64,000 nucleotides of DNA, from positions 419,263 to 483,262 of IMG/VR virus record IMGVR_UViG_3300027996_002186, one strand, 5' to 3'. Below, in pieces: positions 2,434 to 61,287 of this stretch (within the stretch, counting starts at the first letter, position 1; each line of letters begins with the position of its first letter). Position numbers and translations under genes: made by a program. Below the pieces are notes generated by a model that ran no database searches, was not told where the DNA came from, and worked only from the letters and a program-made list of their open reading frames with translations.

Positions 2434-2814
2434 ATGTATATGATTTCAAATAAATCGAAAAAAAGAAAACAACATCAAAAAGAATTAAACTCTCTTAGAA
2501 ATAGGATGGGTTCTAATATCGTTTGGTTTAATTCTCTTTCTGAAAAAAACCAGTGTGATATATTATTTCAATGGAAAAAAGAAAAATATCATAATAAATT
2601 AACACAACCAGAAAAGGTTATAGATAAACTATTCCTACCAAGAAATAGAAAACCACTAAGATATGGATATGGTAATAAAAGGTTCAAATGGGTTGAGCGA
2701 ATAAATTACCCACCAAATATAAAACATTTCATCAATAGTGTGAAGTTACGTTACAAACCAAATGTGGTTCAGTTACGTGAATCTGCTATTGACTTACTTT
2801 TAAAAAATAAATAA
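2434..2814 (+). CDS. Basic hypothetical protein with a variant C-terminal tag
   Basis: In operon; ends LRESAIDLLLKNK. Confidence 0.6.
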   Translation: MYMISNKSKKRKQHQKELNSLRNRMGSNIVWFNSLSEKNQCDILFQWKKEKYHNKLTQPEKVIDKLFLPRNRKPLRYGYGNKRFKWVERINYPPNIKHFINSVKLRYKPNVVQLRESAIDLLLKNK

Positions 2815-2819
2815 ATAAT

Positions 2820-3803
2820 ATGAAAATTTTCAACGGATCAACTAGTGAGAAATTAGCAAATAGTATTTGTAATATACTATGTGTAGAGTTTGACATCGAT
2901 ATCAAACCAGGCAAACTAAAGATAGACAAGTTCTTAGATGGTGAGATATTGCCATTATTCGAAGAGACTGTTAGAGATGAAGATGTTTTCTTTATTCAAT
3001 CAACAATGTCTTCTGATACAATTATGGAAACTCTATTAATAATAGATGCTGCTAAGAGAGCAGGGTGTAAATCATTTACGTTAGTTTCTCCGTTTCAAGG
3101 ATATTCAAGACAAGATAAAACAGACCATTTGAGATCATCTATTGGTTCTAAACTATTAGCCGATATATTAGAGAAAGCTGGTATGACGAGAATTATCACT
3201 ATTGACTTACACGCATCTGCTATTCAGGGATTTTATAATGTTCCGGTTGTTCACCTTAATGGTAACAAGATATTCATTGAACATATCAAAAATAACCAAA
3301 TTGATGATTTAACTATTATTGCACCTGATCAAGGAGCTGTTAAGAGAGCAACAGATTTCTGTAAAGCTTTCCCTGAAGCAACATTTGCAATGATTAATAA
3401 GAAAAGAATTAAACCAAATGAAATTCACTCTATGGAATTGGTTGGTGATGTTGAGGGTAGAAATGTTGTTATCGTTGATGATATGGCTGATACACTTGGT
3501 ACATTAAAAAAAGCTAGTGAATTGGTTATGAAGATGGGAGCTAAGAGTGTTAGAGCAATAGCTACACATGGAGTATTGAGTGGTAAAGCACTTGATAATT
3601 TAGAAACATCTATGTTAACTGAGTTAATGGTTTCTGATAGTATCTCAACAGTTGTTGATAAAAAGTTTAATGAGTCATTGAAAAACAGAGAAGGTGTTAT
3701 GGGTGGTCAAAAATTAAACATCATTTCTTGTGATAGAATTTTAGCTAAGTCTATTAATTTTATCTCAAAGAAAAAGAGTATTCATGAATTGAATATAGTG
3801 TAA
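2820..3803 (+). CDS. prs: Ribose-phosphate pyrophosphokinase (PRPP synthetase family)
   Basis: FLDGE, YSRQDK, IDLHA, APDQGA, GDVEGR, VDDMADTLGT, THGVLSG. Confidence 0.93.
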   Translation: MKIFNGSTSEKLANSICNILCVEFDIDIKPGKLKIDKFLDGEILPLFEETVRDEDVFFIQSTMSSDTIMETLLIIDAAKRAGCKSFTLVSPFQGYSRQDKTDHLRSSIGSKLLADILEKAGMTRIITIDLHASAIQGFYNVPVVHLNGNKIFIEHIKNNQIDDLTIIAPDQGAVKRATDFCKAFPEATFAMINKKRIKPNEIHSMELVGDVEGRNVVIVDDMADTLGTLKKASELVMKMGAKSVRAIATHGVLSGKALDNLETSMLTELMVSDSISTVVDKKFNESLKNREGVMGGQKLNIISCDRILAKSINFISKKKSIHELNIV

Positions 3804-3818
3804 AAAATAATAATTAGT

Positions 3819-4184
3819 ATGAAAGTATTTTTAGTAGATATAGATGGAACCTGTTGTGATGATATTAGTAATGAAGATTCACACTTATATGCAACTGCAA
3901 AAGTTATTGAGGGTTCATTAGAACAAATTAATAAGTGGTATGATGATGGACATCATATTACATTTTTCACGGCTCGTGAATCAAAAGATAGAGATGTTAC
4001 AATAAAATGGTTAGATGATAATGGGTTTAAATATAATGGCCTAATAACAGATAAACCAAGGTGTAAAGGTGAGGATGATGAATATATCTGGATAGATAAT
4101 CGTAAAGTACGCGGGATAACATATAGTGAAGTGTGGGGAGATTTGAAGAAAGTGAATAAAGAAATTTTAACATTCGGAGACTAA
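3819..4184 (+). CDS. Small HAD-superfamily phosphatase
   Basis: VDIDGT motif I, FTAR motif II, KP...IDNR. Confidence 0.8.
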   Translation: MKVFLVDIDGTCCDDISNEDSHLYATAKVIEGSLEQINKWYDDGHHITFFTARESKDRDVTIKWLDDNGFKYNGLITDKPRCKGEDDEYIWIDNRKVRGITYSEVWGDLKKVNKEILTFGD

Positions 4185-4198
4185 AAATAACCTTTGTA

Positions 4199-4492
4199 AT
4201 GAATGAGTGGGTAATAAAAGATATGATAAAACGAGGAATAATCTCCTTTAGTAAGGGAGATGAGGTCGTTCTATTGAAGAGAAAAAAAAATGGTTATCCA
4301 AAATCTGTTAAGGGAGATGAGGTTTATATAATCACTCATATAGAAAATGATAATATAACTATTGCTCAACATTCCACTGATGGTGTTGGTTGGGTAAACC
4401 ATAATAAAGTAAATAAAATATATCTAATAAATAAATCAAAATTAAGAGATATCAAAATAAACTCTATACTGAATGAAACAAATCGGTTATAG
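4199..4492 (+). CDS. Hypothetical SH3-like protein with C-terminal tag
   Basis: FSKGDEV beta-barrel-like start; ends LRDIKINSILNETNRL. Confidence 0.6.
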   Translation: MNEWVIKDMIKRGIISFSKGDEVVLLKRKKNGYPKSVKGDEVYIITHIENDNITIAQHSTDGVGWVNHNKVNKIYLINKSKLRDIKINSILNETNRL

Positions 4493-4522
4493 TAGATATA
4501 AATAAAAAATAATAATATTTAA

Positions 4523-6978: not shown

Positions 6979-7410
6979 TTATTTATAAACCTTAAATGGA
7001 AGACTTTTAGATTTATAACCTTTAAAATCCTCTCTAAACTCTTCAAGTCTAGGTTCTATCTCGTCAGATTTTATTATCCAAAATTGAGCACCAGCTGCTA
7101 TTGCTTTCGCTTTTTCGGATTCCTCGTTGGATGAGGATATTATTCCGACAACCACCTCATTTCCGTATTCAAAATTTATCTTTCTAATCAATTCTATACC
7201 ATCGAAAGAACTACCTAATATATTTAAATCTATAAAGGCACAACTAGGTTTTCCTTTACCACTCTCAAACCATTCTTTAAACATATTACTAGCATCATCT
7301 GAACTAGACACACTTGTAAGGCTTAATGTTATATCTAAAAGACTGCAAGCGTCTTCGAAGACTAGGTGGAATAAGTCTTCATCATCTACTAATAATATTG
7401 AATCAATCAT
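6979..7410 (-). CDS. Single-domain response regulator (receiver only)
   Basis: LLVDDED, phosphoacceptor FIDLN, DGIELI, ISSS, IIKS. Confidence 0.9.
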   Translation of the reverse strand: MIDSILLVDDEDLFHLVFEDACSLLDITLSLTSVSSSDDASNMFKEWFESGKGKPSCAFIDLNILGSSFDGIELIRKINFEYGNEVVVGIISSSNEESEKAKAIAAGAQFWIIKSDEIEPRLEEFREDFKGYKSKSLPFKVYK

Positions 7411-8663
7411 AATGGTATTTCTATTTTTATTTTAGTTCCTATTTTTATTTTTTCACTACTAACACCAAAACCATGTTCTTTCATTATCGCTAAACATATG
7501 TTTAACCCTAATCCCGTTCCAGACTCTTGTTGTTTATTTTTTCTTATATATGGTTTAGATAAGTCTTCAAATTCCTTTTGCGACATCCCTCTTCCATTGT
7601 CTTCTATTATTAGTAAATTTCTATACGAACCTCTATCTTTATTGTATTTCGCTTCATCCATATATATCTTAACTAACTTTGAATCACTGTCATTATATTT
7701 TAACCCATTTCTTATTAGGTTATCTACAGCAGTACAAAATAAAGATTCATTAACGTTACATTCTATTAAATTTTCTATAATAACTTGTTTTGAGTATGCG
7801 GTAGTACTTAGGTGTGATTTTAATATATCCTTTAAATTAAAAATTTCTCTTTCTAATGTAGCATCTTTTTTAACAAGATTTGTAAATTCTTTAACACCAG
7901 TATATACTTTTTGTGAGTGTTTTAACCCTTCCTCTATTAACTTTAAAGAGGATTCTAGTTTTAATTTTTTAATAATTTCGGGAGACATCTTTCTTTTTAA
8001 AGAACGTAAACCTCTTGGCATATAGGTGTTTATCCCACTATGCATATCGTGTCTTAATATTTTTGCAGCATGTTCTAGGTAGGAGTTGGTTTTTTCTATC
8101 TCAGCTTTTTGTTCTACCATTTCTGTTATATTGTTTACTACTTTTAGTATCTTATAACATTTACCATTACCATCTAGAATAGGGTTGTAATTACCATTGA
8201 TGTGAACCTCATCACCTTCACTATCTATTCTCACAAATTCACCACTTTTAAATTCACCATCTCTTAAATCTTTCCAAAACTTTTTATATTTAAGTGTGTT
8301 TTTATATTCATGTTTAACGAACATACTATGATGTTTACCTTTAACCTCTTCTATTGTATAACCAAATATGTCTAGGAAATTTTGGTTTGCTTTAATTACG
8401 TGTCCATCAGGACAAAATTCTATTACAGAATTAGATTTGTTAATAGCGTCTAACATGTTGGAATTGAAATTGGAGTTATTACCTATATTTTCTTTTAGTA
8501 TAATACAAAAAGGTGGTAAAAATAATAACAAACTAATAAACTCATACCAATCTGTATATACCGAAGAATTAATAAATCCAGATAACAACATAACTTTAAC
8601 TACAAAAAAAGTAATTATAATAAGGAAAGATGTGTAAATTGATATGTGGAAACTTTTGTTCAT
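7407..8663 (-). CDS. Membrane PAS-domain sensor histidine kinase
   Basis: Two N-terminal hydrophobic segments; PAS (ANQNFLDIFGY...GKHHSMF...FW..L..GEF); H-box LRHDM; N-box NLIRNGLKY; DNGRG; GTGLGL. Confidence 0.92.
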   Translation of the reverse strand: MNKSFHISIYTSFLIIITFFVVKVMLLSGFINSSVYTDWYEFISLLLFLPPFCIILKENIGNNSNFNSNMLDAINKSNSVIEFCPDGHVIKANQNFLDIFGYTIEEVKGKHHSMFVKHEYKNTLKYKKFWKDLRDGEFKSGEFVRIDSEGDEVHINGNYNPILDGNGKCYKILKVVNNITEMVEQKAEIEKTNSYLEHAAKILRHDMHSGINTYMPRGLRSLKRKMSPEIIKKLKLESSLKLIEEGLKHSQKVYTGVKEFTNLVKKDATLEREIFNLKDILKSHLSTTAYSKQVIIENLIECNVNESLFCTAVDNLIRNGLKYNDSDSKLVKIYMDEAKYNKDRGSYRNLLIIEDNGRGMSQKEFEDLSKPYIRKNKQQESGTGLGLNICLAIMKEHGFGVSSEKIKIGTKIKIEIPL

Positions 8664-35339: not shown

Positions 35340-36473
35340 TTATATATTATCTTTATATTCTGGTATATAATCTAATATATCTTCATCTAATATTTTGTCT
35401 ATTTTCAAATCACGATTAGTAGCAACACCTGGGTTTACTTCTTCCCAGCCTCTACCTATTAGCTTAGTTGTTCTATGTATTATCCTTTTATTAGAATACA
35501 TCTTAGCCTCTTTGTTAATAATGAATATTCCATTTTTACAATGTGATACAGCACTCTCGTAGTTCTCATATACCTTTTCTCCATCATAAGAAACACCACA
35601 ACAACTTATATCAACATTTCGTATCAAATCAATGAATGATTTTTTGTAAATACTTTCTCTAATCTCTGGTTTTTGTATCTCTTTAAGAGCATCACTAGCA
35701 TGTATCAAAATATTGGCCAAGCCAATTACCCGTCTCTTTTGCTCGCACCCAGGTGTGGTTTCTCGCGTCTTCAGAAGACCGCCCGCTGGTCTTATCAATT
35801 GTATTATTTTATCTTCTTTAACCCAACTATGTGGTTCGTTTATAATTTTTATATCTGTATATATGGATGATAAATCCTTTGGTGTTAAAGATTCCATATA
35901 TTTATACCCATTTTGTGTTAGTATATTCTCTACATAATCTAGTGAACCTGATCCTAATATTATATCAACATCGTGTATCTCTCTATCAGAAATACTATCC
36001 CTAACAGATCCTCCAAATATTCTGACTAATGAATTTATTGGGAATAATTCATCTGAATCAAATCCAATATATTCATTTATATTCTTTCTAACCTTATCAC
36101 CAAGTGTCACACCAAGAGACTTAATCTTTTGATTTCTATTCTCAGTTATATAATCATTGTATGATATTTTTACTGACTTAACTATTTCTTCAAATTTATC
36201 TGGGAAAGAAGATGATTTAATCTTCATAGTATATCCTATCCAAATACTTGGATTGAGTATGCTCTTGAAATTAGCACTAGCAAGTCTATTATCAACTCCA
36301 TCAGCACCAATCGATGTACTATCTCTATATTTAACAATATTGATATTAAATGGTATTAACTTAATAGATCTACTTTGTCTATTAAATGTTGGAGCAATTT
36401 CAGACTCGATGTGTCTGTGTACTATTCTTTTTATGGCACTATCGTTAATCGATAAGTCTTCTAATTTCGGCAT
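35340..36473 (-). CDS. Class II (CCA/poly(A) polymerase-like) nucleotidyltransferase
   Basis: IFGGSVRD...HDVDI and NVDISCC; tag motifs RNQKIKSLG (internal) and RDLKIDKIL (C-terminal). Confidence 0.7.
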   Translation of the reverse strand: MPKLEDLSINDSAIKRIVHRHIESEIAPTFNRQSRSIKLIPFNINIVKYRDSTSIGADGVDNRLASANFKSILNPSIWIGYTMKIKSSSFPDKFEEIVKSVKISYNDYITENRNQKIKSLGVTLGDKVRKNINEYIGFDSDELFPINSLVRIFGGSVRDSISDREIHDVDIILGSGSLDYVENILTQNGYKYMESLTPKDLSSIYTDIKIINEPHSWVKEDKIIQLIRPAGGLLKTRETTPGCEQKRRVIGLANILIHASDALKEIQKPEIRESIYKKSFIDLIRNVDISCCGVSYDGEKVYENYESAVSHCKNGIFIINKEAKMYSNKRIIHRTTKLIGRGWEEVNPGVATNRDLKIDKILDEDILDYIPEYKDNI

Positions 36474-36714
36474 TTCTAATTTCTAATTTAAAGTGATATT
36501 CTATATTTCCAGGTATTTTTCGATAAAGAATTTTTAATAATTCTTCATCTGATACAAGACTTCTATTCACTTTATACTTTATAGTTCTCTTTTTCCGTTT
36601 GGTTAAAATAGATATAAGTAAATCCTTATCAGTTAGATTATAACCAATGATTTCCTTCGATCCTTTTTTCCTATTTAGAATCTCCTTTATCCTTGTCTTT
36701 GTGAATATATTCAT
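36445..36714 (-). CDS. Basic hypothetical protein
   Basis: ORF track. Confidence 0.5.
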   Translation of the reverse strand: MNIFTKTRIKEILNRKKGSKEIIGYNLTDKDLLISILTKRKKRTIKYKVNRSLVSDEELLKILYRKIPGNIEYHFKLEIRNAEIRRLID

Positions 36715-43436: not shown

Positions 43437-43443
43437 GTTTACG

Positions 43444-43776: not shown

Positions 43777-44055
43777 ATGGAATCGGATTATATAATAGAT
43801 TTTAAAAGACTTAATGAATTAACTTCACATGAAAATGACAACCCATCATCAAATCAGGGAGGGTTTGGTGCGATGTACATCCACACAACTACTAGAAAAC
43901 TTATCAAAGAATATATGGAAATATACCAAGGTAGGTATAGCAGAAGTAGTGATGGGAAGAAAGTAGATGAGGTTATAGAAACTCTACACTTTAATCGAAT
44001 ACTTATATCAAAATCTGATATAAGAGATGGTAAAATAAAAGAAATATTAGAATGA
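43777..44055 (+). CDS. Hypothetical protein with C-terminal tag
   Basis: Ends IRDGKIKEILE. Confidence 0.7.
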   Translation: MESDYIIDFKRLNELTSHENDNPSSNQGGFGAMYIHTTTRKLIKEYMEIYQGRYSRSSDGKKVDEVIETLHFNRILISKSDIRDGKIKEILE

Positions 44056-44262
44056 ACAAAGACAAAGAAATTTAATTTATGGTAATGAGGAATTATAAAA
44101 AAATGTTATCAAACTTAGTAGCAAATATTGTTGCTTATGATAATTGGTCAGATGAATTTTCACGAAAGGAAATAAACAAACTTTATAAATTATTAATTGC
44201 AATCCGAACAGGAACTCCTGTTAAGAGAATCTAAATTAGAAGGTGTTTTAGATGAGAATTAA
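44052..44262 (+). pseudogene. Disrupted tagged ORF (in-frame TAA plus frameshift)
   Basis: MNKDKEI*FMVMRNY...KLL in one frame; LQSEQELLLRESKLEGVLDEN* in the +1 frame; overlaps both neighbours like an operon gene. Confidence 0.6.
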
Positions 44263-44473
44263 ACTAAAAGATATGCATGATAATATAACTTATAACGAAC
44301 AACACCAAGTAATTTATAAAGGTATTAATTTAGGAATAACAAGAGAAAATATAACAGACTATCAATTTCAAACCGGATTCGACCCAGTTGAAATGGTAGA
44401 AAATTTATACAAACAATCTTTACCAGTGGTTAGAGATAAAAAACTAAATCAAATATTAGATGAAGAAAATTAA
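44252..44473 (+). CDS. Hypothetical protein with C-terminal tag
   Basis: Ends VRDKKLNQILDEEN. Confidence 0.7.
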   Translation: MRIKLKDMHDNITYNEQHQVIYKGINLGITRENITDYQFQTGFDPVEMVENLYKQSLPVVRDKKLNQILDEEN

Positions 44474-44804
44474 AATGTACGATTTCTTATCGTCAAAAGA
44501 AGGTATTTATATCTCATACTTAATCAAAGAGGTTGATAAAAATGAATCAATTTGGAAATCAACCTATGAAAGCAGAGATAAAAAGCTAACCTTATTATTA
44601 AACGAAGACTTACTCATAGTTAGTGAGAACGTGGCGGAACATTACAAATCAATAAAAAATAAGATTAATGATTTAGATTTTGTTAGTTCGGATATTATAA
44701 AAAATATGGATGCGCTGGTTGAAGAACTTGATAAGACAGTACAATATACAGAATACGTAACAGACAAAATAAAGGAATGTGAATGTCAGGATATAAAGGA
44801 ATAA
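44460..44804 (+). CDS. Hypothetical protein with internal tag
   Basis: Internal SRDKKLTLLL. Confidence 0.65.
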   Translation: MKKIKMYDFLSSKEGIYISYLIKEVDKNESIWKSTYESRDKKLTLLLNEDLLIVSENVAEHYKSIKNKINDLDFVSSDIIKNMDALVEELDKTVQYTEYVTDKIKECECQDIKE

Positions 44805-45061: not shown

Positions 45062-45272
45062 TGGTATTAGATTACACAAAATAGGAGCCGAGAAGACTAG
45101 AGTATTTGAGGTTAACTTTGATGAAGTTTATGACCATTATAAACAAAAAGCAGAAGATGCTGGTTATTTTGGAGATCTTAAATTCATTAAAGAGAGGGGC
45201 AAAATAATAGTTTATTCTGTGATAGAGTTACCACCTGATGATGATGAATTAATCATCCGAGTTTCCTCTTAA
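45054..45272 (+). CDS. Hypothetical protein
   Basis: Coupled ORF. Confidence 0.55.
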   Translation: MSDGIRLHKIGAEKTRVFEVNFDEVYDHYKQKAEDAGYFGDLKFIKERGKIIVYSVIELPPDDDELIIRVSS

Positions 45273-45731: not shown

Positions 45732-46797
45732 TTATAAATTTCATACTTATTTCTTTTACGACTGGTCTAACATCAGTCTCTAAATCTGATTCCGATATAG
45801 ATATTTCAAAATCATCAAACTGCATTTCAGATTTAAATTTATATTCACCATCTTTCTTACCAACATATGAAAATTCTTCTTTCCACTCATTCATACCATT
45901 ATCAAGTACTTGAAATTCTATTGGGATTGATCCATTTGGATCAAAAGATGGGTTTCTTGCTTCTTCTCTCGATTTGTGTGAAGTGTTATTGTTTATTCCG
46001 TTAGGAAAATGTTTATCTAAAAAATCTAATAAACCCTTTATATTGAAATCATCTAAGCTTTTTAATTTCTCTGGATGAGGTGGGTAACTAAATGTCCCTC
46101 TTTTGTTATGTTGGCTAAACCTAATTGTAATGTTTTCAACATCATATTTAATTATATCCTTTATTTGGTTGATTCTATAATCGACATCATCTAATAGAAT
46201 AGTATTTTGTCCTCTTTTATAAAGAAGTACACCTATACCATATTTTGTAAATCCATTGGATGGCATACTTCTTTCCCTACTTGGGGTGACCATATAACCA
46301 TATCCCAAATCTTCCATATCATACAACATACTCTCAACATCACCACCGACATCATTATTATCTATATTTGTAATAGACTCATTTAGACTACAATCAGTTA
46401 CGTTTATATCAATATACCAAACTTCTGTCCCAATATAATCCAAAATATCTGAACTACTTAATTGGTACCATTCATTACCACTTAGATGTATCTCATATGT
46501 GCAAAAATTACAACCCTTTGACTTAACATATTGTGAAACTCTATATAAAGAATCAGATAGTTCTTTTGTTATTTCAAATTTCCCAGACATACTACCATCC
46601 TTGGTTGGTGTTATCTGAAAAAATATTCTATCAACCCCACGATTCGATCGTGTAATTTTCTTATTTATGAAAAGACCTAAATCCTCCACTTCTAATAAAA
46701 TATCTTTGATATCATCAAATAAATCCAAGAGGATTGCTTGAGGAAATTGAGGATATTTTGATTTCTCAAATAATTTATATGTTTCTAAATATTTCAT
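45715..46797 (-). CDS. Paralogous-domain family protein, two domain copies
   Basis: MKYLETYKLFE; DIKDILLEVEDLGL; SLNES linker; DVESMLYDMEDLGY. Confidence 0.7.
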   Translation of the reverse strand: MKYLETYKLFEKSKYPQFPQAILLDLFDDIKDILLEVEDLGLFINKKITRSNRGVDRIFFQITPTKDGSMSGKFEITKELSDSLYRVSQYVKSKGCNFCTYEIHLSGNEWYQLSSSDILDYIGTEVWYIDINVTDCSLNESITNIDNNDVGGDVESMLYDMEDLGYGYMVTPSRERSMPSNGFTKYGIGVLLYKRGQNTILLDDVDYRINQIKDIIKYDVENITIRFSQHNKRGTFSYPPHPEKLKSLDDFNIKGLLDFLDKHFPNGINNNTSHKSREEARNPSFDPNGSIPIEFQVLDNGMNEWKEEFSYVGKKDGEYKFKSEMQFDDFEISISESDLETDVRPVVKEISMKFINEVPD

Positions 46798-47774
46798 ATC
46801 TTAAATCTTAATCTAATATTGAAGCTGTGATAATGGCAATTCATTAACTCATCTATTGATTTCATATCTGCCCATTTATTTTGAAAGGATGCCGTTGCGA
46901 CCGAGATGAATAACTCATAACCAAGAGTTGTCATATAAGCATCTAGTCTTCTAACTACTTCACCGAACCATTCTGGTAAATCAAGTGATCCACTTCTATC
47001 AACCTCATCCCTCATATTAATTGTATCTATATTAATATAGAATGGTATGAAATAACCCTCTTTAATCTCATAATCAACATCATTATCAATAAACTCAATA
47101 CAAATATCATCAAGATCTCTTCTTAACTCAGATTTCTCGGTGTTCCGGAAGTTTTGATTTAAGTGGGTGTCCGAAAACAAATGTTGCTTCCGTTCGGTAA
47201 ATCTTACCAGACCAAACTGAGGTGATTCTACTTTACTCTCTGTGTAATATCCCGATGAAATTCTAATCGGAGGCCTTGTTTTTTTTGTTTTTATATCTAT
47301 TTGTGATATCTTAAAATAACCACTATCGAATTCAGAAATATTCTCTAGTTTTTCTAGATTTATATCTAAATCACACACACCCATTTCTGTATAATCAACG
47401 TTAAAAGCGGAGTTTTGATAAAATGCTCCAAACCTTAAATCACTATCTAAATATTCATCAAGTCTCATAATAATATCTATCAATTCTTCTGTTATTTTTA
47501 TATCACCAGAGTCACTCCCAGCACCAGAAGAAATATCATACTTATCATATATCTCAATCATCATATCATTATAAATACCTGATTTAGAATGCATTGAAGT
47601 TTGTTGATTGTAATCAACAAACAAATGACCTGTTAAAGATTCACCATCCATTGTTGATGATATTATACGATATTGTAGCCCTAAATCAATAAGATCCAAA
47701 CAGATATCATTGATATTATCCATTTCATCTGCACTTATCCCAACACTTTCATTAAAACTTTTTAAGTATTTCAT
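46794..47774 (-). CDS. Paralogous-domain family protein, two domain copies
   Basis: MKYLKSFNES; NINDICLDLIDLGL; YTES linker; DLDDICIEFIDND...RRLDAYMTTLG. Confidence 0.7.
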   Translation of the reverse strand: MKYLKSFNESVGISADEMDNINDICLDLIDLGLQYRIISSTMDGESLTGHLFVDYNQQTSMHSKSGIYNDMMIEIYDKYDISSGAGSDSGDIKITEELIDIIMRLDEYLDSDLRFGAFYQNSAFNVDYTEMGVCDLDINLEKLENISEFDSGYFKISQIDIKTKKTRPPIRISSGYYTESKVESPQFGLVRFTERKQHLFSDTHLNQNFRNTEKSELRRDLDDICIEFIDNDVDYEIKEGYFIPFYINIDTINMRDEVDRSGSLDLPEWFGEVVRRLDAYMTTLGYELFISVATASFQNKWADMKSIDELMNCHYHSFNIRLRFKI

Positions 47775-47811
47775 ATATAAATCTATATATTAATATGGTA
47801 AACCCATTACA

Positions 47812-48456
47812 ATGGTAAAAAGATATCTTGATGAAATTAATCTAAATAAAACACAAGGCCACATAACTTGTTATGTTAATAACCCCAGATACAACCTATT
47901 AAAGATACATAGTGATGTAGTCCGTATAGACTTCACACACTTATATAATCGTGTTTTGATACAGATGGATGATGAAGGACTTATACCTGATGAGAAGGTA
48001 AATATAGAATCAATAAAATATTTATTAAGTATTAAGGAAGATGTAGAAGAATCTGATATGTCTAATTGGAGATACGTTTTCAACTCGATATGGAGTAGGG
48101 TTTTTCGAAGAAATCAAAATGGTGCTAATATTGTGTGTGATTACTTACACCATTTTTACAAAGAACTTTTATACAAAAATAATAATGAAATTATTTATAT
48201 AGACACTGATAGTATTATTTTAAATGGGTTAAGCCAAGATGTTAAAAAACTAATAGATGAGTTAGAACTACCATATAAAATTGTTGATGTAGATTATTTT
48301 TATTTAATTGCTAAAAAGCGTTACGCTTATACAGATGAGAATCATAATATTAAAATAAAAGGATTACTTAAAAAGGAATTAAACCGTTTTGAAAAACTAG
48401 AATCTATGATGAGAACACATATAAGAGAAGATAAACTTATAAGTATTGGGTTATAA
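47812..48456 (+). CDS. Minimal family-B DNA polymerase palm-like protein with C-terminal tag
   Basis: IDFTHLYN (motif A), RYVFNSIWS (motif B-like), YIDTDSI (motif C), KKRYAY...IKGL; ends IREDKLISIGL. Confidence 0.75.
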   Translation: MVKRYLDEINLNKTQGHITCYVNNPRYNLLKIHSDVVRIDFTHLYNRVLIQMDDEGLIPDEKVNIESIKYLLSIKEDVEESDMSNWRYVFNSIWSRVFRRNQNGANIVCDYLHHFYKELLYKNNNEIIYIDTDSIILNGLSQDVKKLIDELELPYKIVDVDYFYLIAKKRYAYTDENHNIKIKGLLKKELNRFEKLESMMRTHIREDKLISIGL

Positions 48457-48570
48457 TGTGGTGGGGAAAAAGAAGAGAGAAAGGAAGACGAAAATCATAG
48501 GATATACCAGAGGTTCTAGACAGACCCGAACATAGAGATAGAAGAGTTAGAAAATTAAAAAAATATTCAA

Positions 48571-50601
48571 ATGAAAATGTATAAATACCCAGAATTTAAA
48601 TACCCAAACTTAGAAACATATATATCAGAACTTGAGAGTATATTAAATAAGTCAGAATTAGTAATAAATGAATTGTTAAAAATTGATAATAAAACATATG
48701 ATACTTTCCTAAAGCCATATTTCATGGCTTATGAAGATATAAACAATCATTACTTTTATCTATCACACATAAATTCAGTTAAGAATACTGATGATACACA
48801 ACGTGTTGAAACTGAGAGCTTACCAATTATGAGTGATTGGTACACAAAGATAGGTCAACGAGATGACATTCATCAAGCATTATTGGAGGTTTCGAAAACA
48901 AATCTTAACCCAAGTCAGCGCATAGTAATCGAACAATCATTGCTTAGTAACAAACTAAAGGGTATTGGTCAAGAAGATTCAATTAAGAAAAGGCTTGGTG
49001 AAATTAGCAAAGAGTTATCTGAGTTATCTGATTCATTTTCTACAAACCTACTAAAAGCTACAAAGGATTTCAAACTAGAAGTAAAAAATCCAGAAGATGT
49101 TAGTGAGTTCCCTGATGATGAATTACAAAGACATGTAAAAGAGGATACTGATCATTGGGAATTTACCTTACAAGCACCATCATACTCAGCTTACTTAAAG
49201 TATGGATCTAACACAGATATAAGAGAGAAATTATCCAAAGCATTATCAACAAGAGCTACTGAAAATGAAGAACTTATTGAAAAAATATTAACTCTTAAAA
49301 ACGAAAAGGCTAAAATATTAGGATATAAAAATTACGCTGAGATATCGATATTAACAAAAATGGCTGATAGTCCAAATGAAATAGTTGGGTTTTTGGATAG
49401 GTTAGCAACAATCGCCTTACCTATTAAGTCAAAAGAAGATGATGAATTATTATCATTCACTGAAAGAAAGTATGGCGTAACACATTTAAACTCTTGGGAT
49501 AAAGGTTATTACACAAATAAATATAAGGAAAGTGTTTATGATTTTAAGTCAGAAGATTTGAAACCATATTTTGAACAATCAATGGTGTTAAATGGTTTAT
49601 TTGACTTTCTGTATGAAAAATTCAAGCTTAAATTTACTAAAGTAGATACTTATGTTTGGGATGAAAAGGTTACTGTGTATGATATAACACGTAATGGTGA
49701 AGAACATTCAAGAGTTTATATCGATCTAGAATCTAGAGATGATAAAAGATCCGGTGCTTGGATGAATAATTCAGAAGTTGGTTATGTAAAGGAAAATGGT
49801 GAAAAGGTTTTACCAATTGCTTATATAACTTGCAATTTCACACCATCAACTGATAAGTTACCATCATTACTTTCACACTATGAAGTAGAAACACTATTTC
49901 ATGAGATGGGACATGTATTACAACACGTCTGTTCAGAAGTGGAAGATTTCACATACGCTGGTATAGGTGGTATCGAGTGGGATGCTGTTGAGTGGAGTTC
50001 TCAATTTTTAGAACTATTTGTTTATGAAGGAGATGTATTAAGGAAATTTGGTAAACACCATGAAACTGGTGAAATAATACCGGATGAGTTCATTAAAAAG
50101 ATTAACGATTTAAGAACATACAGAGCAGCTAATGGAATCATAGGACAAGTGAAGAATGGTAAATTCGATATGACAATTTTCCAATCAGATGATACGTCAA
50201 AGGAATATGTACAATCAACACTTGATAAGATAATAGAAGATTTTGGATTGGAATCTTTTGATGGTAATAAATGGCAATGTGGGTTTAGTCATATTTTTGC
50301 TGGTGGATACTCAGCAGGGTATTACTCTTATAAATGGTCAGAAGTTCTTTCAGTTGATACTTTCTTAAAATTTAGAGAAAATGATGATAGTGATAAGTAT
50401 TATGAAGAATTTTTGAGTAAGGGCTCATCTCTGCCAAGTATGGATATGTTTGTTAATTATATGGGTAGAAAGCCTAGTGAAGAATCATTAGTAAACTACC
50501 TAATCGGATTACAACCTGTTTCGTCAGGTCGAGAGTTTGAATCCCTTCAAGCGAAGTTTGATTCAAAAAGAATTAATAATGAACTTAGAGGGTTGGGGTA
50601 A
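48571..50601 (+). CDS. prlC: M3A metallopeptidase, oligopeptidase A (OpdA/PrlC)-like
   Basis: KRSGAWM, TLFHEMGH, WDAVE.SSQFLE, FSHIFAGGYSAGYYSYKWSEV. Confidence 0.93.
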   Translation: MKMYKYPEFKYPNLETYISELESILNKSELVINELLKIDNKTYDTFLKPYFMAYEDINNHYFYLSHINSVKNTDDTQRVETESLPIMSDWYTKIGQRDDIHQALLEVSKTNLNPSQRIVIEQSLLSNKLKGIGQEDSIKKRLGEISKELSELSDSFSTNLLKATKDFKLEVKNPEDVSEFPDDELQRHVKEDTDHWEFTLQAPSYSAYLKYGSNTDIREKLSKALSTRATENEELIEKILTLKNEKAKILGYKNYAEISILTKMADSPNEIVGFLDRLATIALPIKSKEDDELLSFTERKYGVTHLNSWDKGYYTNKYKESVYDFKSEDLKPYFEQSMVLNGLFDFLYEKFKLKFTKVDTYVWDEKVTVYDITRNGEEHSRVYIDLESRDDKRSGAWMNNSEVGYVKENGEKVLPIAYITCNFTPSTDKLPSLLSHYEVETLFHEMGHVLQHVCSEVEDFTYAGIGGIEWDAVEWSSQFLELFVYEGDVLRKFGKHHETGEIIPDEFIKKINDLRTYRAANGIIGQVKNGKFDMTIFQSDDTSKEYVQSTLDKIIEDFGLESFDGNKWQCGFSHIFAGGYSAGYYSYKWSEVLSVDTFLKFRENDDSDKYYEEFLSKGSSLPSMDMFVNYMGRKPSEESLVNYLIGLQPVSSGREFESLQAKFDSKRINNELRGLG

Positions 50602-52107: not shown

Positions 52108-52224
52108 AAGTACTTTCCACTTGTCACATCTTCAAAAATATATTCCCAAAATTTACTGCAATGGATAGAAAGAAAAAGATACGCAAAATATTTAACTTAC
52201 CAGAAGAAAAATTACCATTTTAAG

Positions 52225-56439: not shown

Positions 56440-56889
56440 TTAATCCTTTATACCCAATTCTTTTAATTTTGATTCTCTAATCAATCTCTTTGTTTCTGGA
56501 TAATTATCATATATATAATCCACCATTGTGTGTATTTCGTTAATAACATAATCTTTATCTCTATAAGTACCAGTCATTTCAAATGGAGACCGCGTGGATA
56601 AATATTCATCTAGTATATAATAAGGAGAAAAGTCATTAGAATGAGCAGTATCAAATCCTATTTTCAATTCATTATCAACCACCTCACAATAAGTAACACT
56701 ACCATGACAAGGTATAGACTCTGCTTCATCATTATCGAAAAGTGGATGCCAGTTTGGTATGAAAATATATCCACACCAATTTTTCATCTGATTCCTTATC
56801 ATCTCACATTTGATATGTAAATATTCAAATTTGAGATTATCTCCTTCTTTATCTAAAATATCTAATATTTCCTCTTTATTCATATTCAC
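56440..56889 (-). CDS. Conserved phage-type protein (WCGY/HG/GFD.AH) with C-terminal tag
   Basis: WCGYIFIP..HP, CHGSVTY, IGFDTAH..D; ends IRESKLKELGIKD. Confidence 0.7.
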   Translation of the reverse strand: MNMNKEEILDILDKEGDNLKFEYLHIKCEMIRNQMKNWCGYIFIPNWHPLFDNDEAESIPCHGSVTYCEVVDNELKIGFDTAHSNDFSPYYILDEYLSTRSPFEMTGTYRDKDYVINEIHTMVDYIYDNYPETKRLIRESKLKELGIKD

Positions 56890-58330: not shown

Positions 58331-60034
58331 CTAAAAAGGAAGATCATCTCCATCACCATATCCAAAGTTAACATCTGATTGATCATCATCTAAATTAAAA
58401 ACCGGCTCAGAAGGCGGCGGTGTAGGATCAACCTCACGAGGTATATTATCAAAGTATCTCCTTGGTACTCTACTAGACTCTATTATAAGTTCACGAACCC
58501 TATCCAAGTCCCCTGCCGTTAACCTATCGATATGAAGGATAGACTGAACCTCTGATACATTACTTTCCCTTCTTATACGTCCGATTGATTGCTCAACACA
58601 CTCACCTTCATCCATCTGATCTATTGGCATCTCAACTTCATCCTCAACTTCATCAGGGTCGAAGTCTTCATTATACTCCGGATCAGGGTCGAAGTCTTCA
58701 TTATACTCCGGATATAAAAAATCCGCATCAATCCCACCATATCCAACTTCCCTATTATCCCTTATCTTTAAGTATGTACCATTCGTACACCTAAACTCCC
58801 TTGTATGACCCAACTCTTTATCATTCGTAATAATTAAACAACCATCCTCATTTATACAAAAACACATCGTATCCATATAAGGAAAGTAATCCATATCAAC
58901 CGTGTCTAATTCAACCTCAAACCTATCATCAATCTCATTTCCATCTAAAGTAACACAAGCCTCTGGATACATCGTTTGCTCTACCTTACGATACCAACCC
59001 TTATTCTTAGCATAAGTCTTGAATAACTCTATATCACTATCAACATTACAGTAGATTCTATCTAAAAACTTTACCATACGCCCATTATACTTTACATCCC
59101 ATAATAACGCCCTACCCTTGATTCTATCAGATTCATATGAACCTTGTTTCAAAATTCCATCATCACTATATAAAATTACCATCGAACAACAACTGTTCTT
59201 AGAATAGATGTTAAAAAATTCCTTTGGCTTATTAGCCATACAAGAATTACTTAACTGACCTCCACCACCTACATAATTATCTCCATTATACCAAAAAGCA
59301 ATTTTATCACCAGTAACTATATTAAACTGTATATCCTTATTAGTAGAAAAATCATATGAAGACTTATATAAATTTACAAAGTCCTCGATATCCTTAGTAA
59401 TAAACTTTATACCCGCCGTAGTAAGTATAAGCCTAACTAACCTACCCACCTTTATCGAATTCCTATTCACCGTGAAAATAACATCACTATTGTCAGAAAT
59501 AATAATAGCCTTTTTATTTACTACCGATAACCTACCAGTATCTAAACACTTGAATAAAACATAAACCTTATCAGTAGAAGGACTTACAACCTCATTTATA
59601 ATTTTACCCTTATCTCCAATACCACAACCACACGATAACCCACCATCCATAAGAACACTATCTATACAATCACACGATGGCTCCGGATACCAATAATCGT
59701 TAACACTCTTATCATATCCTATTAAACCGAAAATAGTATTATTAGAATTACTATGAGTTAAATTCCTAATCGAACTAACACCATATACCTTAGGTAAATC
59801 ACTAAGTATCTTTTCTACCTTATCAGATGGAGTAAAAGTAACTAACCTATTCGTATCACCTATACTTATAAAGTTATAATCAAAACTATCAAACGCCATT
59901 CCAACTGCTGCAAGCCCAGGATGTCTGTGGTCAGGTTCTCCAGATAACCTTTCTATAAGCAAAAGATTTTTAGATACCTTATTATACGATACCCTTTGTA
60001 GTAACTCCCGAAACTTCTTTGAAAATTTTAACAT
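58331..60034 (-). CDS. SCM-motif phage protein with acidic tail (start revised from 60088)
   Basis: GQLSNSCMA, IKGRALLW, FLDRIY, FPYMDT; ends DDLPF. Confidence 0.65.
   Translation of the reverse strand: MLKFSKKFRELLQRVSYNKVSKNLLLIERLSGEPDHRHPGLAAVGMAFDSFDYNFISIGDTNRLVTFTPSDKVEKILSDLPKVYGVSSIRNLTHSNSNNTIFGLIGYDKSVNDYWYPEPSCDCIDSVLMDGGLSCGCGIGDKGKIINEVVSPSTDKVYVLFKCLDTGRLSVVNKKAIIISDNSDVIFTVNRNSIKVGRLVRLILTTAGIKFITKDIEDFVNLYKSSYDFSTNKDIQFNIVTGDKIAFWYNGDNYVGGGGQLSNSCMANKPKEFFNIYSKNSCCSMVILYSDDGILKQGSYESDRIKGRALLWDVKYNGRMVKFLDRIYCNVDSDIELFKTYAKNKGWYRKVEQTMYPEACVTLDGNEIDDRFEVELDTVDMDYFPYMDTMCFCINEDGCLIITNDKELGHTREFRCTNGTYLKIRDNREVGYGGIDADFLYPEYNEDFDPDPEYNEDFDPDEVEDEVEMPIDQMDEGECVEQSIGRIRRESNVSEVQSILHIDRLTAGDLDRVRELIIESSRVPRRYFDNIPREVDPTPPPSEPVFNLDDDQSDVNFGYGDGDDLPF
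58652..58713 (-). repeat. Perfect 30-bp tandem duplication within the CDS
   Basis: ATCAGGGTCGAAGTCTTCATTATACTCCGG x2 (PEYNEDFDPD). Confidence 0.95.
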
Positions 60035-60149
60035 ATGTAATACGATTAATTGATTTTTAATATCACAAATATAGTGTTTATTTTTCAATAAACAACTCTA
60101 AGTAAGAACAATTTTACAAACTTACAAGAACTTACAACATATAAATTAT

Positions 60150-60317
60150 ATGAAAATAACAGCTAAACATTTATACCCTATGAGAACAGTAACAGGACTA
60201 AATTATAAATCTCCTTGGAGCGGAAATAAGATTAGAATGGCTAAACTTAATAACATCTTTAAATTAACAATAACCAAAGAACCTAAAACATTACTAACAA
60301 CATATGAAAACTTATGA
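60150..60317 (+). CDS. 55-aa ORF with tag-like motif (not in ORF track)
   Basis: MKITAKHLYP...IRMAKLNNIFK...; ATGA overlap with next ORF. Confidence 0.5.
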   Translation: MKITAKHLYPMRTVTGLNYKSPWSGNKIRMAKLNNIFKLTITKEPKTLLTTYENL

Positions 60318-60436
60318 ATAAACAAAGCACTTGGAATGATAATAATCCTTATGATTATGAATTACCTTGGAAAGATAATAAACCTAATAAAACGATAATA
60401 AGAATGCGTAAGATTCTAAAGATATATGATGAGTGA
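60314..60436 (+). CDS. 40-aa ORF with C-terminal tag-like motif (not in ORF track)
   Basis: MNKQSTW...IRMRKILKIYDE. Confidence 0.5.
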   Translation: MNKQSTWNDNNPYDYELPWKDNKPNKTIIRMRKILKIYDE

Positions 60437-60462
60437 TAGAATAGAAAGTGATAAGAAGTTAA

Positions 60463-60624
60463 ATGAATATAATGAAGTTTAAAAGTCCAGGAGTAAGCAC
60501 TAAAGAGAAAGACTTGGCGATAATGCAGATAAAGAGCACAAATTCGAATTACCTGACACAAACATTTATAAGGTACAAACCTAATAAAAGGAAAACATCT
60601 ATAATTAAAATATATGGTGAATAG
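60463..60624 (+). CDS. 53-aa ORF with SPGV motif and tag-like end (not in ORF track)
   Basis: MNIMKFKSPGVSTKEKDL...KRKTSIIKIYGE. Confidence 0.5.
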   Translation: MNIMKFKSPGVSTKEKDLAIMQIKSTNSNYLTQTFIRYKPNKRKTSIIKIYGE

Positions 60625-60852
60625 TTAAGTAAAAAGAAAGAATCAATTAAGAAAAGTAAATTGAAGTAAATTGATACATAGTGAACTTAGTACAGAATAA
60701 TGGTTGTATTTCTGTAAGATTTTGAGTTGATCCTATCAGATCCTATCAGTCTCTCTTGATTTACCTTTTTAGGTACTTACGTGTATATGCAGCCATCGTC
60801 TGAACACCGTACACCCATTAGATCACAGACGGGTACTTTTTTGAGATAAAAT

Positions 60853-61287
60853 TTGAAAGATATGAAGAATGAATTAACAGTGCGTACTGAGGTTATAAGT
60901 GTTGAATTTACTTGTAGTAATTACAATAGAATGGCTACTATCTTGGCGCCAAAATTTTCTAATCATGTACTGAGTGTAAAGGCTACTTGGTCAAACATTT
61001 CTTTTGACGCCAACAGTAAGTTTACCAGACGGAGAAAGTCCTATGCAAATTCTGTTAGTACTGATATTTTACTAGCACCTCCTGGAGGTTCTCGTTTCAA
61101 ATATAACGCCAAGTGTTTTTTAACGGGTGAATACAAATTAGATTTGAGGTGGTATGAATATTTTGGTTTAAATTCAGATGTTGATATTGAAATACAGAAG
61201 GAGGGTACTATGGAGTTACCGGTTGAGATATATTATACTTCTGTTATCTTGGATAGGCAGGATAAATTGGAGACGTTAGGAGTGTAG
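60853..61287 (+). CDS. Hypothetical protein with C-terminal tag
   Basis: Ends DRQDKLETLGV. Confidence 0.65.
   Translation: MKDMKNELTVRTEVISVEFTCSNYNRMATILAPKFSNHVLSVKATWSNISFDANSKFTRRRKSYANSVSTDILLAPPGGSRFKYNAKCFLTGEYKLDLRWYEYFGLNSDVDIEIQKEGTMELPVEIYYTSVILDRQDKLETLGV

What the first reader, a model, noticed from the sequence alone, without database searches (positions are those of the whole stretch)
2434..61287. A second, mostly C-terminal peptide tag RxxK(I/L)xx(I/L) on about 14 other proteins
Seen at or near C-termini: LRDIKINSIL (4492), NRDLKIDKIL (35340-), IRDGKIKEIL (44055), LRESKLEGVL (44262), VRDKKLNQIL (44473), IREDKLISIGL (48456), IRESKLKELGI (56440-), DRQDKLETLGV (61287), IRMRKILKIY (60436). 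Variants: LRESAIDLLL (2814), KREQLLEQLL (33002-), KRKTSIIKIY (60624). Internal copies: NRNQKIKSLG, SRDKKLTLLL, IRMAKLNNIF. Carriers are unrelated (SH3-like, NTase, mini-PolB, WCGY protein, 40-55-aa peptides) and the underlying DNA differs, so conservation appears to be at protein level. Inference: an amphipathic-helix docking signal for one common partner (phage scaffold/compartment, sliding clamp, AAA protease adaptor or membrane). I know of no description of this tag.
Basis: partly seen in the sequence, partly recalled or inferred. Interest (0 to 1): 0.85.

Follow-up and report, generated by a model that had tools for sequence, protein, structure and literature searches.

The report
Shared C-terminal helix tag in megaphages
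A marine giant phage and its relatives put the same short C-terminal helix (K-x-x-h-R-[D/E]-x-K-[I/L]-x-x-[I/L]-[L/G]) on about a tenth of their otherwise unrelated, mostly small non-late proteins, which points to an undescribed address tag that docks them all onto one still unknown partner.

Summary
All 15 quoted peptides are at the stated places. R..K[IL]..[IL] occurs 11 times in the window's proteins (2.4 in shuffles) and 7 times in the last 25 residues (0.24). In the closest complete relative, LR745206.1 (635 kb), 115 of 997 proteins end in it (1.9 expected), with R 9-16 residues from the stop. Carrier bodies are unrelated, and codon use at the conserved positions equals genome usage, so selection acts on the protein. 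Pfam and PDB searches found nothing, and four of six literature searches, aimed at a description of it, found none. AlphaFold predicts a helix, and the conserved residues fall on one face. Tag genes avoid the putative late promoter and lie in tightly overlapping arrays, partly behind host-type promoters. None carries the second tag, an N-terminal T4-CTS-like peptide found on late proteins. The tag occurs on several large AT-rich phage contigs and is absent from four AT-rich relatives. Best reading: a docking helix for one lineage-specific partner acting before late gene expression. Capsid cargo, sliding clamp, membrane anchor and chance are disfavoured. The partner is not identified.

The parts
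4442..4471 (+). C-terminal tag LRDIKINSIL of ORF 4199-4492 (97 aa, weak SH3-like hit)
   Evidence: HMM 16.2 bits. The ortholog in LR745206.1 keeps it.
35388..35417 (-). Near-C-terminal tag NRDLKIDKIL of ORF 35340-36473, a CCA-adding-enzyme-like nucleotidyltransferase of 377 aa
   Evidence: 9.8 bits. R354 is invariant and K357 is at least 90% conserved in 56 homologs. AF2 predicts helix 352-363 with pLDDT 66-75 next to a core at 90-95. The fold matches CCA-adding enzymes.
36111..36140 (-). Internal copy NRNQKIKSLG at the end of the N-terminal module of the same nucleotidyltransferase
   Evidence: Conserved in the long homologs; most homologs of 200-260 aa lack it (5 of 42 show an internal match) and the 207-230 aa examples end right after the C-terminal tag, so the module with its tag looks fused on. 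AF2 predicts helix 105-119. The HMM score of 7.5 bits is at noise level.
44020..44049 (+). C-terminal tag IRDGKIKEIL of ORF 43777-44055 (92 aa, ORFan)
   Evidence: HMM 10.7 bits.
44221..44250 (+). Stranded tag LRESKLEGVL in a 21-codon frame (44197-44262), the remnant of a truncated gene
   Evidence: ORF 44079-44234 matches only the first 39 aa of LR745206.1 584122-584556 (144 aa), which ends in the tag. The sequence is identical in independent metagenome contigs.
44429..44458 (+). C-terminal tag VRDKKLNQIL of ORF 44252-44473 (73 aa)
   Evidence: HMM 15.0 bits. The ortholog keeps it.
44571..44600 (+). Internal copy SRDKKLTLLL in ORF 44460-44804 (114 aa)
   Evidence: Matches the strict pattern, but is not among the 40 best HMM hits listed. 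About 10 such internal copies exist in LR745206.1 against 0.6 expected.
48421..48453 (+). C-terminal tag IREDKLISIGL of ORF 47812-48456 (214 aa; the 'mini-PolB' label is doubtful)
   Evidence: The ortholog in LR745206.1 ends IREDKLIELGI at 48% body identity. HMM 6.4 bits, at noise level.
56449..56481 (-). C-terminal tag IRESKLKELGI of ORF 56440-56889 (149 aa, WCGY / phrog_2164 family)
   Evidence: HMM 11.9 bits. AF2 predicts a separate helix 132-144 after the core ends at residue 129. 28 of 152 family representatives carry the tag, and homologs in cultured phages lack it.
61252..61284 (+). C-terminal tag DRQDKLETLGV of ORF 60853-61287 (144 aa)
   Evidence: The ortholog at 27% body identity still ends DREDKLKLLGVSI. 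HMM 2.2 bits, at noise level.
60231..60260 (+). Sub-variant IRMAKLNNIF in the small ORF 60150-60317 (55 aa), 27 aa from the end
   Evidence: HMM 6.8 bits, at noise level. The same R-x-x-K-[IL]-x-x-I-F form occurs on 36-52 aa proteins of LR745206.1.
60398..60427 (+). Sub-variant IRMRKILKIY at the end of the small ORF 60314-60436 (40 aa); weak
   Evidence: HMM only 2.3 bits.
52164..52193 (+).
   Evidence: HMM 14.1 bits, third best of 1519 frames. The only start codon leaves a 20-aa peptide. Whether it is expressed is unknown.
36451..36480 (-). Degenerate copy IRNAEIRRLI (K changed to E) at the end of ORF 36445-36714 (89 aa)
   Evidence: The ortholog in LR745206.1 has the canonical IRNVKIRRLI.
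2773..2802 (+). The same holds for 33011-33040(-) and 60586-60615(+).
   Evidence: None of the three is among the 40 best tag-HMM hits listed, the last of which scores 2.0 bits.

Best explanation
The motif is a true short linear motif: an amphipathic C-terminal helix of about 14 residues, K(-4)-x-x-h-R(0)-[D/E]-x-K-[I/L]-x-x-[I/L]-[L/G/F], followed by 0-6 variable residues. It has been added to more than 100 unrelated proteins per genome in a group of large AT-rich phages with T4-like head and tail genes. One tag-bearing contig encodes a T9SS sorting domain, which hints at Bacteroidota hosts.

Its conserved residues (K-4, R0, K3, I/L4, I/L7, L8, D1) all lie on one face of the helix. I infer that this face docks into a groove of a single common partner that co-evolves with the phage lineage.

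The carriers are mainly small accessory ORFans plus a few enzymes. Their genes sit in tightly overlapping arrays that lack the putative late promoter. I therefore infer that the tag works in the infected cell before or apart from virion assembly. It would gather or hand over non-late proteins to one hub: a phage-encoded scaffold, a chaperone, or an adaptor for timed removal.

Shown: the motif exists, it is C-terminal, it is under protein-level selection, it is modular, it is predicted helical, its genes are not late, it excludes the N-terminal tag, and it is lineage-restricted. Inferred: docking to one partner. Unknown: the identity of the partner and the consequence of binding.
For: - Enrichment: window 7 C-terminal copies against 0.24; LR745206.1 115 against 1.9, with R 9-16 aa from the end.
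- AT-rich negative controls have no C-terminal hits: T4 65 genes, PTm1 143, LR756501 158, LR756500 206, and two 50-kb samples of Lak-B1 read in code 15.
- Carrier bodies are unrelated. The largest carriers have no Pfam hit, and only one of ten has a PHROG hit, to a family of unknown function.
- Codon use at the conserved positions equals genome usage.
- One-face conservation follows from the logo.
- AF2 predicts tag helices in two unrelated carriers. In the nucleotidyltransferase the tag is invariant across 56 homologs yet has lower pLDDT than the core, as expected for a binding motif.
- The tag is an add-on. The WCGY core ends before it, homologs in cultured phages lack it, and tagged and untagged members are interleaved on the family tree.
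- Orthologs keep the tag at 27-70% body identity.
- Lineage drift: in LR756504 position 1 is mostly K, against D/E in LR745206.1, across 11 body clusters.
- Timing: 4 of 115 tag genes have [AT]ATATATA within 60 nt upstream, against 22% of other genes and 44% of N-tag genes. The same motif precedes tube, sheath, terminase, portal and MCP genes.
- Transcription units that hold only C-tag genes carry the late motif in 13% of cases, against 72% for N-tag-only units. They carry TAnnTTTG in 25%, against 4%.
- No protein carries both tags; 10.4 would be expected if the tags were independent.
Against: - No partner was found, and no multimer prediction or experiment was possible.
- The late-promoter assignment is inferred from six structural genes only. 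63% of tag genes lie in units with neither promoter motif.
- In the WCGY model the tag helix has pLDDT of about 91, so there it may pack on its own protein rather than stay free.
- More than 100 clients is a large number for one hub.
- The shift at position 1 in LR756504 rests on 15 carriers, some of them paralogous.
Confidence: 0.55

Rival explanations
1. Capsid cargo signal. The helix binds the scaffold or coat and loads the proteins into the prohead for ejection with the DNA, as the T4 CTS, the C-terminus of the P22 scaffolding protein or encapsulin cargo peptides do.
For: - There is a precedent for diverse proteins that share only a short targeting peptide: the T4 internal proteins (PMC3012670; PMC8442874).
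- From memory, the P22 scaffold ends in a basic R-x-x-K helix that binds coat protein.
- These phages have T4-like head genes.
Against: - Tag genes are strongly depleted of the promoter motif that precedes all identified structural genes.
- A separate N-terminal CTS-like tag sits on late genes and never on the same protein.
- The acidic 707-aa protein just upstream of the MCP does not end in the tag.
- No tag copies occur in the 140-180 kb stretch that holds the tail-tube, sheath and terminase genes.
Confidence: 0.1
2. Self-association module. The helices bundle with each other (homo- or hetero-oligomers), or simply cap and stabilise small domains, with no separate partner.
For: - It is an amphipathic helix with an [IL]-x-x-[IL]-L core.
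- The tag helix has high pLDDT next to the last core helix in the WCGY model.
- Many carriers are tiny and may need oligomerisation to be stable.
Against: - The invariant R0 and K3 and the one-face conservation across more than 100 unrelated bodies are hard to explain by packing on different folds.
- The nucleotidyltransferase tag has low pLDDT despite being invariant.
- There is no i/i+4 charge covariation between positions 1 and 5.
Confidence: 0.1
3. Sliding-clamp (PIP-like) peptide. The spacing [D/E/N]1-x-x-h4-x-x-h7-h8 mimics a PIP box and tethers the proteins to the phage or host clamp.
For: The spacing equals Q-x-x-h-x-x-a-a and the position is at the extreme C-terminus. One carrier has a weak polymerase-like PHROG hit.
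Against: - T4 gp43 and gp55 end in SLDFL[FY]. The C-terminal fragment of the split PolB of LR745206.1 ends in ...MDIFGGFK, and the UvsX homolog ends in ...EDIFG. So a T4-type aromatic motif already exists, and it is not this tag.
- The tag has almost no aromatic residues.
- The 'mini-PolB' is not detectably a polymerase.
Confidence: 0.04
4. Membrane-targeting amphipathic helix of the MinD/FtsA type.
For: It is a C-terminal amphipathic helix with basic residues.
Against: - Arg is invariant at the centre of the hydrophobic stripe.
- An acidic residue sits at position 1, and the tails are acidic.
- No aromatic residues are present, yet sequence specificity is strong.
- Carriers have no hydrophobic runs.
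Confidence: 0.04
5. Nascent-peptide signal. The last 10-16 residues act inside the ribosome tunnel at the stop codon to tune termination and re-initiation in overlapping gene arrays.
For: - 69% of tag genes overlap the start of the next gene, against 34% of other genes. TGA stops are enriched, 32% against 18%.
- The motif lies 9-16 residues from the stop.
Against: - The distance to the stop varies by 0-6 residues or more, and the last residues are not conserved.
- In the window only one of the seven tag ORFs (44252-44473) overlaps the next gene.
- Conserved internal copies exist.
- The nucleotidyltransferase keeps the tag with 14-40 residues after it.
Confidence: 0.04
6. Compositional chance, or a DNA-level repeat in a 29% GC genome.
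For: K, I, L, N, D and E are the commonest residues.
Against: - Shuffles and four AT-rich control genomes give about zero C-terminal hits.
- Synonymous codons vary as in the genome as a whole.
- Orthologs and two protein families conserve the motif.
Confidence: 0.01

Closest known systems
T4 capsid targeting sequence (CTS, MKTYQEFIAE) of the internal proteins
   Same: A roughly 10-residue terminal peptide is the only thing shared by a diverse set of phage accessory proteins, and it addresses them to one place (PMC3012670, PMC8442874). These phages have T4-like head genes.
   Different: The CTS is N-terminal, works during head assembly and is cleaved off. This tag is C-terminal, has a different sequence and sits on non-late genes. 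A CTS-like N-terminal tag exists separately in the same genomes and never on the same protein.
PIP-box and T4-type C-terminal clamp-binding peptides
   Same: A short helical motif at the extreme C-terminus of many unrelated proteins docks them on one hub, with the same h4/h7/h8 spacing.
   Different: This tag has no Gln and no aromatic pair. The polymerase fragment of the relative carries a T4-like ...DIFGGF tail instead. There are more than 100 carriers, mostly ORFans.
Encapsulin cargo-loading peptides and microcompartment encapsulation peptides
   Same: Terminal peptides or amphipathic helices on unrelated cargo bind a shell protein.
   Different: The consensus differs, no shell gene is known here, and the genes are not expressed with the capsid genes.
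C-terminal coat-binding helix of the P22 scaffolding protein (recalled from memory)
   Same: A basic C-terminal helix with R and K three residues apart, followed by G-I.
   Different: That helix sits on the scaffold protein itself. Here the candidate scaffold lacks the tag and the carriers are non-late accessory proteins.
LxxLL docking helices, and the C-terminal F-box-like (PRANC) motif of poxvirus ankyrin proteins (from general knowledge)
   Same: An [IL]-x-x-[IL]-L amphipathic helix flanked by charges. In poxviruses a shared C-terminal motif links many divergent viral proteins to one host hub.
   Different: These are eukaryotic systems with no sequence relationship. The analogy is one of logic only.

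Membership tests
T4 capsid targeting sequence | N-terminal position and an MKTYQEFIAE-like sequence | tested here: not met
   The tag lies 9-16 residues from the C-terminus. The CTS-like sequence MK[YH][IL]K.[FY][NE]E is on other proteins, with no overlap between the two sets. The CTS sequence is taken from PMC8442874.
T4 capsid targeting sequence | Expressed with the head genes (late) | tested here: not met
   4 of 115 tag genes have the motif that precedes the structural genes, against 44% of N-tag genes. The promoter assignment is inferred.
T4 capsid targeting sequence | Removed by the prohead protease and found in virions | not testable with these tools
   The phages are uncultured and no proteomics exist.
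Clamp-binding peptide (PIP-box / T4 SLDFLF type) | Aromatic pair at positions 7-8, or an SLDFLF-like sequence | tested here: not met
   Positions 7 and 8 are I/L and L/G; F is at position 8 in only about 12% of copies.
Clamp-binding peptide (PIP-box / T4 SLDFLF type) | Carried by the replicative polymerase C-terminus | tested here: not met
   The C-terminal PolB fragment of LR745206.1 ends ...MDIFGGFK. T4 gp43 ends SLDFLFG.
Scaffolding-protein coat-binding helix | Located on the scaffold protein encoded next to the major capsid protein | tested here: not met
   The 707-aa acidic protein upstream of the MCP ends ...AIMERFKSI, without the tag. Its identity as the scaffold was not itself proven.
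Encapsulin / microcompartment cargo peptides | Shell gene in the genome and the family consensus (for example GSL-rich) | not tested
   The consensus clearly differs. Shell genes were not searched for.
Membrane-targeting sequence (MinD/FtsA type) | Amphipathic helix with loose sequence, aromatic or large hydrophobic residues and a basic rim | tested here: inconclusive
   The helix is amphipathic and basic, but R and K are invariant, D is conserved and aromatics are absent. No lipid assay was possible.
C-terminal degrons (ssrA / ClpX C-motifs) | The last 2-3 residues and the free carboxylate are conserved | tested here: not met
   0-15 variable residues follow the motif. An adaptor-type degron that reads an internal helix is not excluded.
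Any curated domain or solved structure | Significant match of the tag profile | tested here: not met
   A profile of 26 tags gave no PDB sequence hit at E up to 10. Its members gave no meaningful Pfam hit.

The most novel reading that the evidence does not exclude
These megaphages run a two-address system covering about 20% of their proteome. An N-terminal T4-CTS-like peptide marks late proteins for the capsid. This C-terminal helix marks more than 100 non-late accessory proteins for a dedicated, phage-specified hub, compartment or timed-removal adaptor. Such a protein-sorting layer is not known in any phage.
Probability: 0.3. Interest if true: 0.9.

Novelty: new variant of a known kind. Interest (0 to 1): 0.8.

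Why it matters
If one helix addresses a tenth of a megaphage proteome, then hundreds of ORFans with no other annotation gain a shared, testable property. A single pull-down with a 16-residue peptide could reveal the organising hub of early infection in the largest known phages.

The tag also gives a sequence marker for this phage group and a way to separate non-late accessory genes from virion genes in uncultured genomes. It could serve as a portable docking peptide. The parallel N-terminal CTS-like tag suggests that terminal-peptide addressing is a general strategy for managing very large viral proteomes.

Tried and rejected
- Pfam and PHROG scans of window carriers and of the ten largest carriers of the relative gave almost nothing.
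- The tag profile found nothing in PDB sequences or Pfam.
- ESM Atlas gave no lead.
- Six literature searches were run. The four aimed at a description of such a motif found none; the other two concerned the T4 CTS.
- Clamp hypothesis: tested through T4 homologs and rejected.
- Scaffold hypothesis: the head gene cluster was located with T4 queries, and the protein upstream of the MCP lacks the tag.
- DNA-level repeat or promoter hypothesis: rejected by codon analysis.
- Intrahelical salt-bridge covariation between positions 1 and 5: none.
- Looked for a cultured model phage: Tenacibaculum phage PTm1 has neither tag in 100 kb.
- A family-wide locus search failed with the 70-sequence alignment and worked with 10 sequences.
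- Fold search of the WCGY model found no structural relative.
- A phyletic search for the partner was not possible, because only one tag-bearing genome was read in full.


Full report
**What the window is.** The 64-kb window has 29% GC and about 104 ORFs that cover 94% of it under the standard code. It is part of IMG/VR contig IMGVR_UViG_3300027996_002186 (483 kb). Its closest public relatives are uncultured huge phages: LR745206.1 (635 kb; a 1558-aa protein is 49% identical) and LR756502.1 (642 kb). phmmer with T4 proteins finds T4-like tail tube, sheath, terminase, portal and major capsid genes in LR745206.1. The same phage sequence occurs in marine and seawater metagenomes from many studies between 2012 and 2020. 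Independent contigs are identical over 43000-48500.

**Check of the observation.** All 15 quoted peptides are at the stated positions.
Seven copies lie in the last 25 residues against 0.24. A stricter form occurs 7 times against 0.05.
- I joined the whole of LR745206.1 from 13 fetched pieces. 115 of its 997 proteins (11.5%) carry the pattern in the last 25 residues against 1.9 expected. The Arg lies 9-16 residues from the end, with a peak at 10-11.
- Four AT-rich control genomes gave no C-terminal hit: T4 65 genes, Tenacibaculum phage PTm1 143, LR756501 158, LR756500 206. Two 50-kb samples of Lak-B1 read in code 15 also gave none. Composition alone is therefore not the cause.
- An HMM built only from LR745206.1 tags recovers six window copies above the best shuffled score, including an unlisted micro-ORF at 52161-52223.
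- That HMM puts the G-type endings (…LGI, …LGV) at noise level, but orthologs support them.

**Anatomy.** The extended consensus is K(-4)-x-x-[IL](-1)-R(0)-[DE](1)-x-K(3)-[IL](4)-x-x-[IL](7)-[LGF](8), followed by 0-6 mostly charged residues.
- On a helical wheel all conserved residues fall within one arc of about 160 degrees, with Arg in the middle of the hydrophobic stripe. The opposite face is variable. This is my reading.
- Codon use at R0, K3 and the two I/L positions equals genome-wide usage, so selection acts on the peptide and not on the DNA.
- With the tag removed, 118 carrier bodies fall into 113 blastp clusters. The only pairs are orthologs between the window and LR745206.1, plus one paralog pair. 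The same holds in LR756502.
- The ten largest carriers of LR745206.1 have no Pfam family, and only one has a PHROG family, of unknown function.
- Carriers are small (median 101 aa), soluble and of neutral charge.

**The tag is an add-on under strong constraint.** Two carrier families can be followed outside these genomes.
- *WCGY family* (window 56440-56889, phrog_2164). It has 1649 homologs. 23 strict and 5 loose tag copies are found among 152 representatives, clustered on the family tree but interleaved with untagged members (14 changes against 26 in shuffles). Homologs in cultured Staphylococcus K-like phages and in N4 (gp4) align only up to about residue 135 and lack the tag. AlphaFold gives pLDDT 93.9. 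The core ends with helix 112-129, and the tag is a further helix, 132-144.
- *Nucleotidyltransferase* (window 35340-36473). Its fold matches the head and neck of class II CCA-adding enzymes. It has 120 listed homologs. R354 is invariant and K357 is at least 90% conserved in a 56-sequence alignment. Short homologs of 207-230 aa end right after the tag. Long homologs carry an N-terminal module that itself ends in the internal copy, which indicates a fusion. AlphaFold predicts helix 352-363 for the tag at pLDDT 66-75 beside a core at 90-95. High conservation with low structural confidence is what a binding motif shows.
- Orthologs between the window and LR745206.1 keep the tag at body identities from 70% down to 27%.

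**Timing and genomic setting.** The motif [AT]ATATATA precedes the tube, sheath, terminase, portal, pre-MCP and MCP genes of LR745206.1, so I take it as the late promoter.
- It lies within 60 nt upstream of 4 of 115 tag genes (3%), against 22% of other genes and 44% of genes with the N-terminal tag.
- At the level of transcription units, 13% of units holding only C-tag genes have it, against 72% of N-tag-only units. The Bacteroidota-type -7 element TAnnTTTG precedes 25% of C-tag-only units, against 4% of N-tag-only units and 10% of units with neither tag.
- In the window, none of 7 tag genes has the late motif and 5 of 14 N-tag genes do.
- Tag genes cluster: 33 adjacent pairs against 13 expected. 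They overlap the next gene's start in 69% of cases against 34%. This layout is typical of the early accessory arrays of T4-like phages.

**A second, exclusive tag.** 90 proteins of LR745206.1 and 14 of the window begin with MK[YH][IL]K.[FY][NE]E. This resembles the T4 capsid targeting sequence MKTYQEFIAE (PMC8442874). No protein has both tags, where 10.4 would be expected. The T4 precedent is that diverse internal proteins share only a short targeting peptide (PMC3012670). The N-terminal tag therefore looks like the capsid address, and the C-terminal tag like a different address.

**Distribution.** Relatives were ranked by MCP identity to LR745206.1.
- LR756502 (76%) has the tag.
- LR756504 (53%) has it in a shifted form, R-K-x-K-I-E-x-L, across 11 body clusters.
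- LR756501 (52%), LR756500 (35%), Lak-B1 (30%) and PTm1 (29%) show none in 100 kb each.
- Among 80 IMG/VR loci that hold WCGY homologs, tag-rich loci occur only on large AT-rich contigs of 92-508 kb. 67 loci have none.
- Two further metagenome contigs carry 4-5 C-tags together with N-tags. One of them also encodes a T9SS sorting domain, which hints at a Bacteroidota host.
- The coordinated shift of the motif within one lineage argues for co-evolution with one partner.

- *Clamp.* T4 gp43 and gp55 end in SLDFL[FY]. The C-terminal fragment of the split PolB in LR745206.1 ends ...MDIFGGFK, and the UvsX homolog ends ...EDIFG. A T4-type motif is therefore already in use, and it is not this tag. The "mini-PolB" has no detectable similarity to polymerase fragments.
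- *Scaffold or capsid.* This is disfavoured by the timing, by the separate CTS-like tag, and by the untagged acidic protein upstream of the MCP.
- *Membrane.* This is disfavoured by the invariant charged residues and the lack of aromatics.
- *Protease adaptor.* This remains open. The extreme C-terminus is variable, so a classical ssrA-type degron is excluded, but an adaptor that reads the helix is not.

**Conclusion.** The tag is a real, undescribed C-terminal docking-type helix carried by about a tenth of the proteome of a group of marine and freshwater jumbo and mega-phages. It sits mainly on non-late accessory ORFans. The most likely mechanism is binding of its conserved face to one lineage-specific partner in the infected cell. 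The partner and the outcome of binding (tethering, chaperoning or timed removal) are not known. The profile searches found no match in Pfam or PDB, and the literature searches found no description.

Noticed in passing
window ORF starts at 9015(-), 15923(-), 16186(-), 17089(-), 20094(-), 20497(-), 20553(+), 38480(+), 42885(+), 45731(-), 46797(-), 47774(-), and others; also LR745206.1: An N-terminal tag MK[YH][IL]K.[FY][NE]E is on 14 window proteins and 90 proteins of LR745206.1. It resembles the T4 capsid targeting sequence MKTYQEFIAE. It is linked to the putative late promoter and never occurs together with the C-terminal tag.
   Followed up: partly
window, within about 35 nt upstream of the ORF starts at 17607(-), 20497(-), 20553(+), 42885(+) and 47774(-); L006/L007 upstream of the structural genes: The motif [AT]ATATATA lies 12-35 nt upstream of start codons and before all T4-like structural genes. 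It is a likely late promoter, comparable to the T4 TATAAATA.
   Followed up: partly
window 44079-44262: A gene remnant. The 51-aa ORF matches only the first 39 aa of a 144-aa protein of LR745206.1, and the tag survives in another frame. The sequence is identical in independent metagenomes, so this is a real deletion and not an assembly error.
   Followed up: yes
window 58331-60088 (-): This 585-aa protein ends ...GDGDDLPF, like the acidic tip of bacterial SSB (DDDIPF). Similar tips (...DDGIPF...EEELPL) occur in LR745206.1, and some nucleotidyltransferase homologs end in acidic-aromatic tails after the tag.
   Followed up: no
LR745206.1 130568-131992 (-) and 232803-234344 (+) (loci L005, L007): The replicative PolB is split into separate, distant genes. 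The C-terminal fragment ends ...MDIFGGFK, similar to the T4 clamp-binding SLDFLFG. The UvsX homolog ends ...EDIFG.
   Followed up: partly
window 7407-8663 (-) and 6979-7410 (-): A PAS-domain histidine kinase is encoded in the phage (Pfam). The adjacent 143-aa ORF begins like a response-regulator receiver domain, which was not tested. This may be a phage-borne two-component system.
   Followed up: no
window 48571-50601 (+): An M3-family oligopeptidase A-like peptidase (Pfam E = 1e-105). It also occurs in some jumbo Pseudomonas and Acinetobacter phages.
   Followed up: no
window 52161-52223 (+): A 20-codon micro-ORF that consists almost only of a high-scoring tag copy. It may be a remnant or a free tag peptide.
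   Followed up: partly
window 26683-26904 (+); 61596-61669 (-): A 73-aa protein ends in DGPSI repeats. A single tRNA-Gln(UUG) gene lies among tiny ORFs near the window end.
   Followed up: no
window 35340-36473 (-) and homologs: The nucleotidyltransferase family has only the head and neck of a CCA-adding enzyme, about 207 aa in its minimal form, and lacks the tRNA-binding body and tail. In their place it ends in the tag. Substrate binding may therefore depend on the tag's partner.
   Followed up: partly
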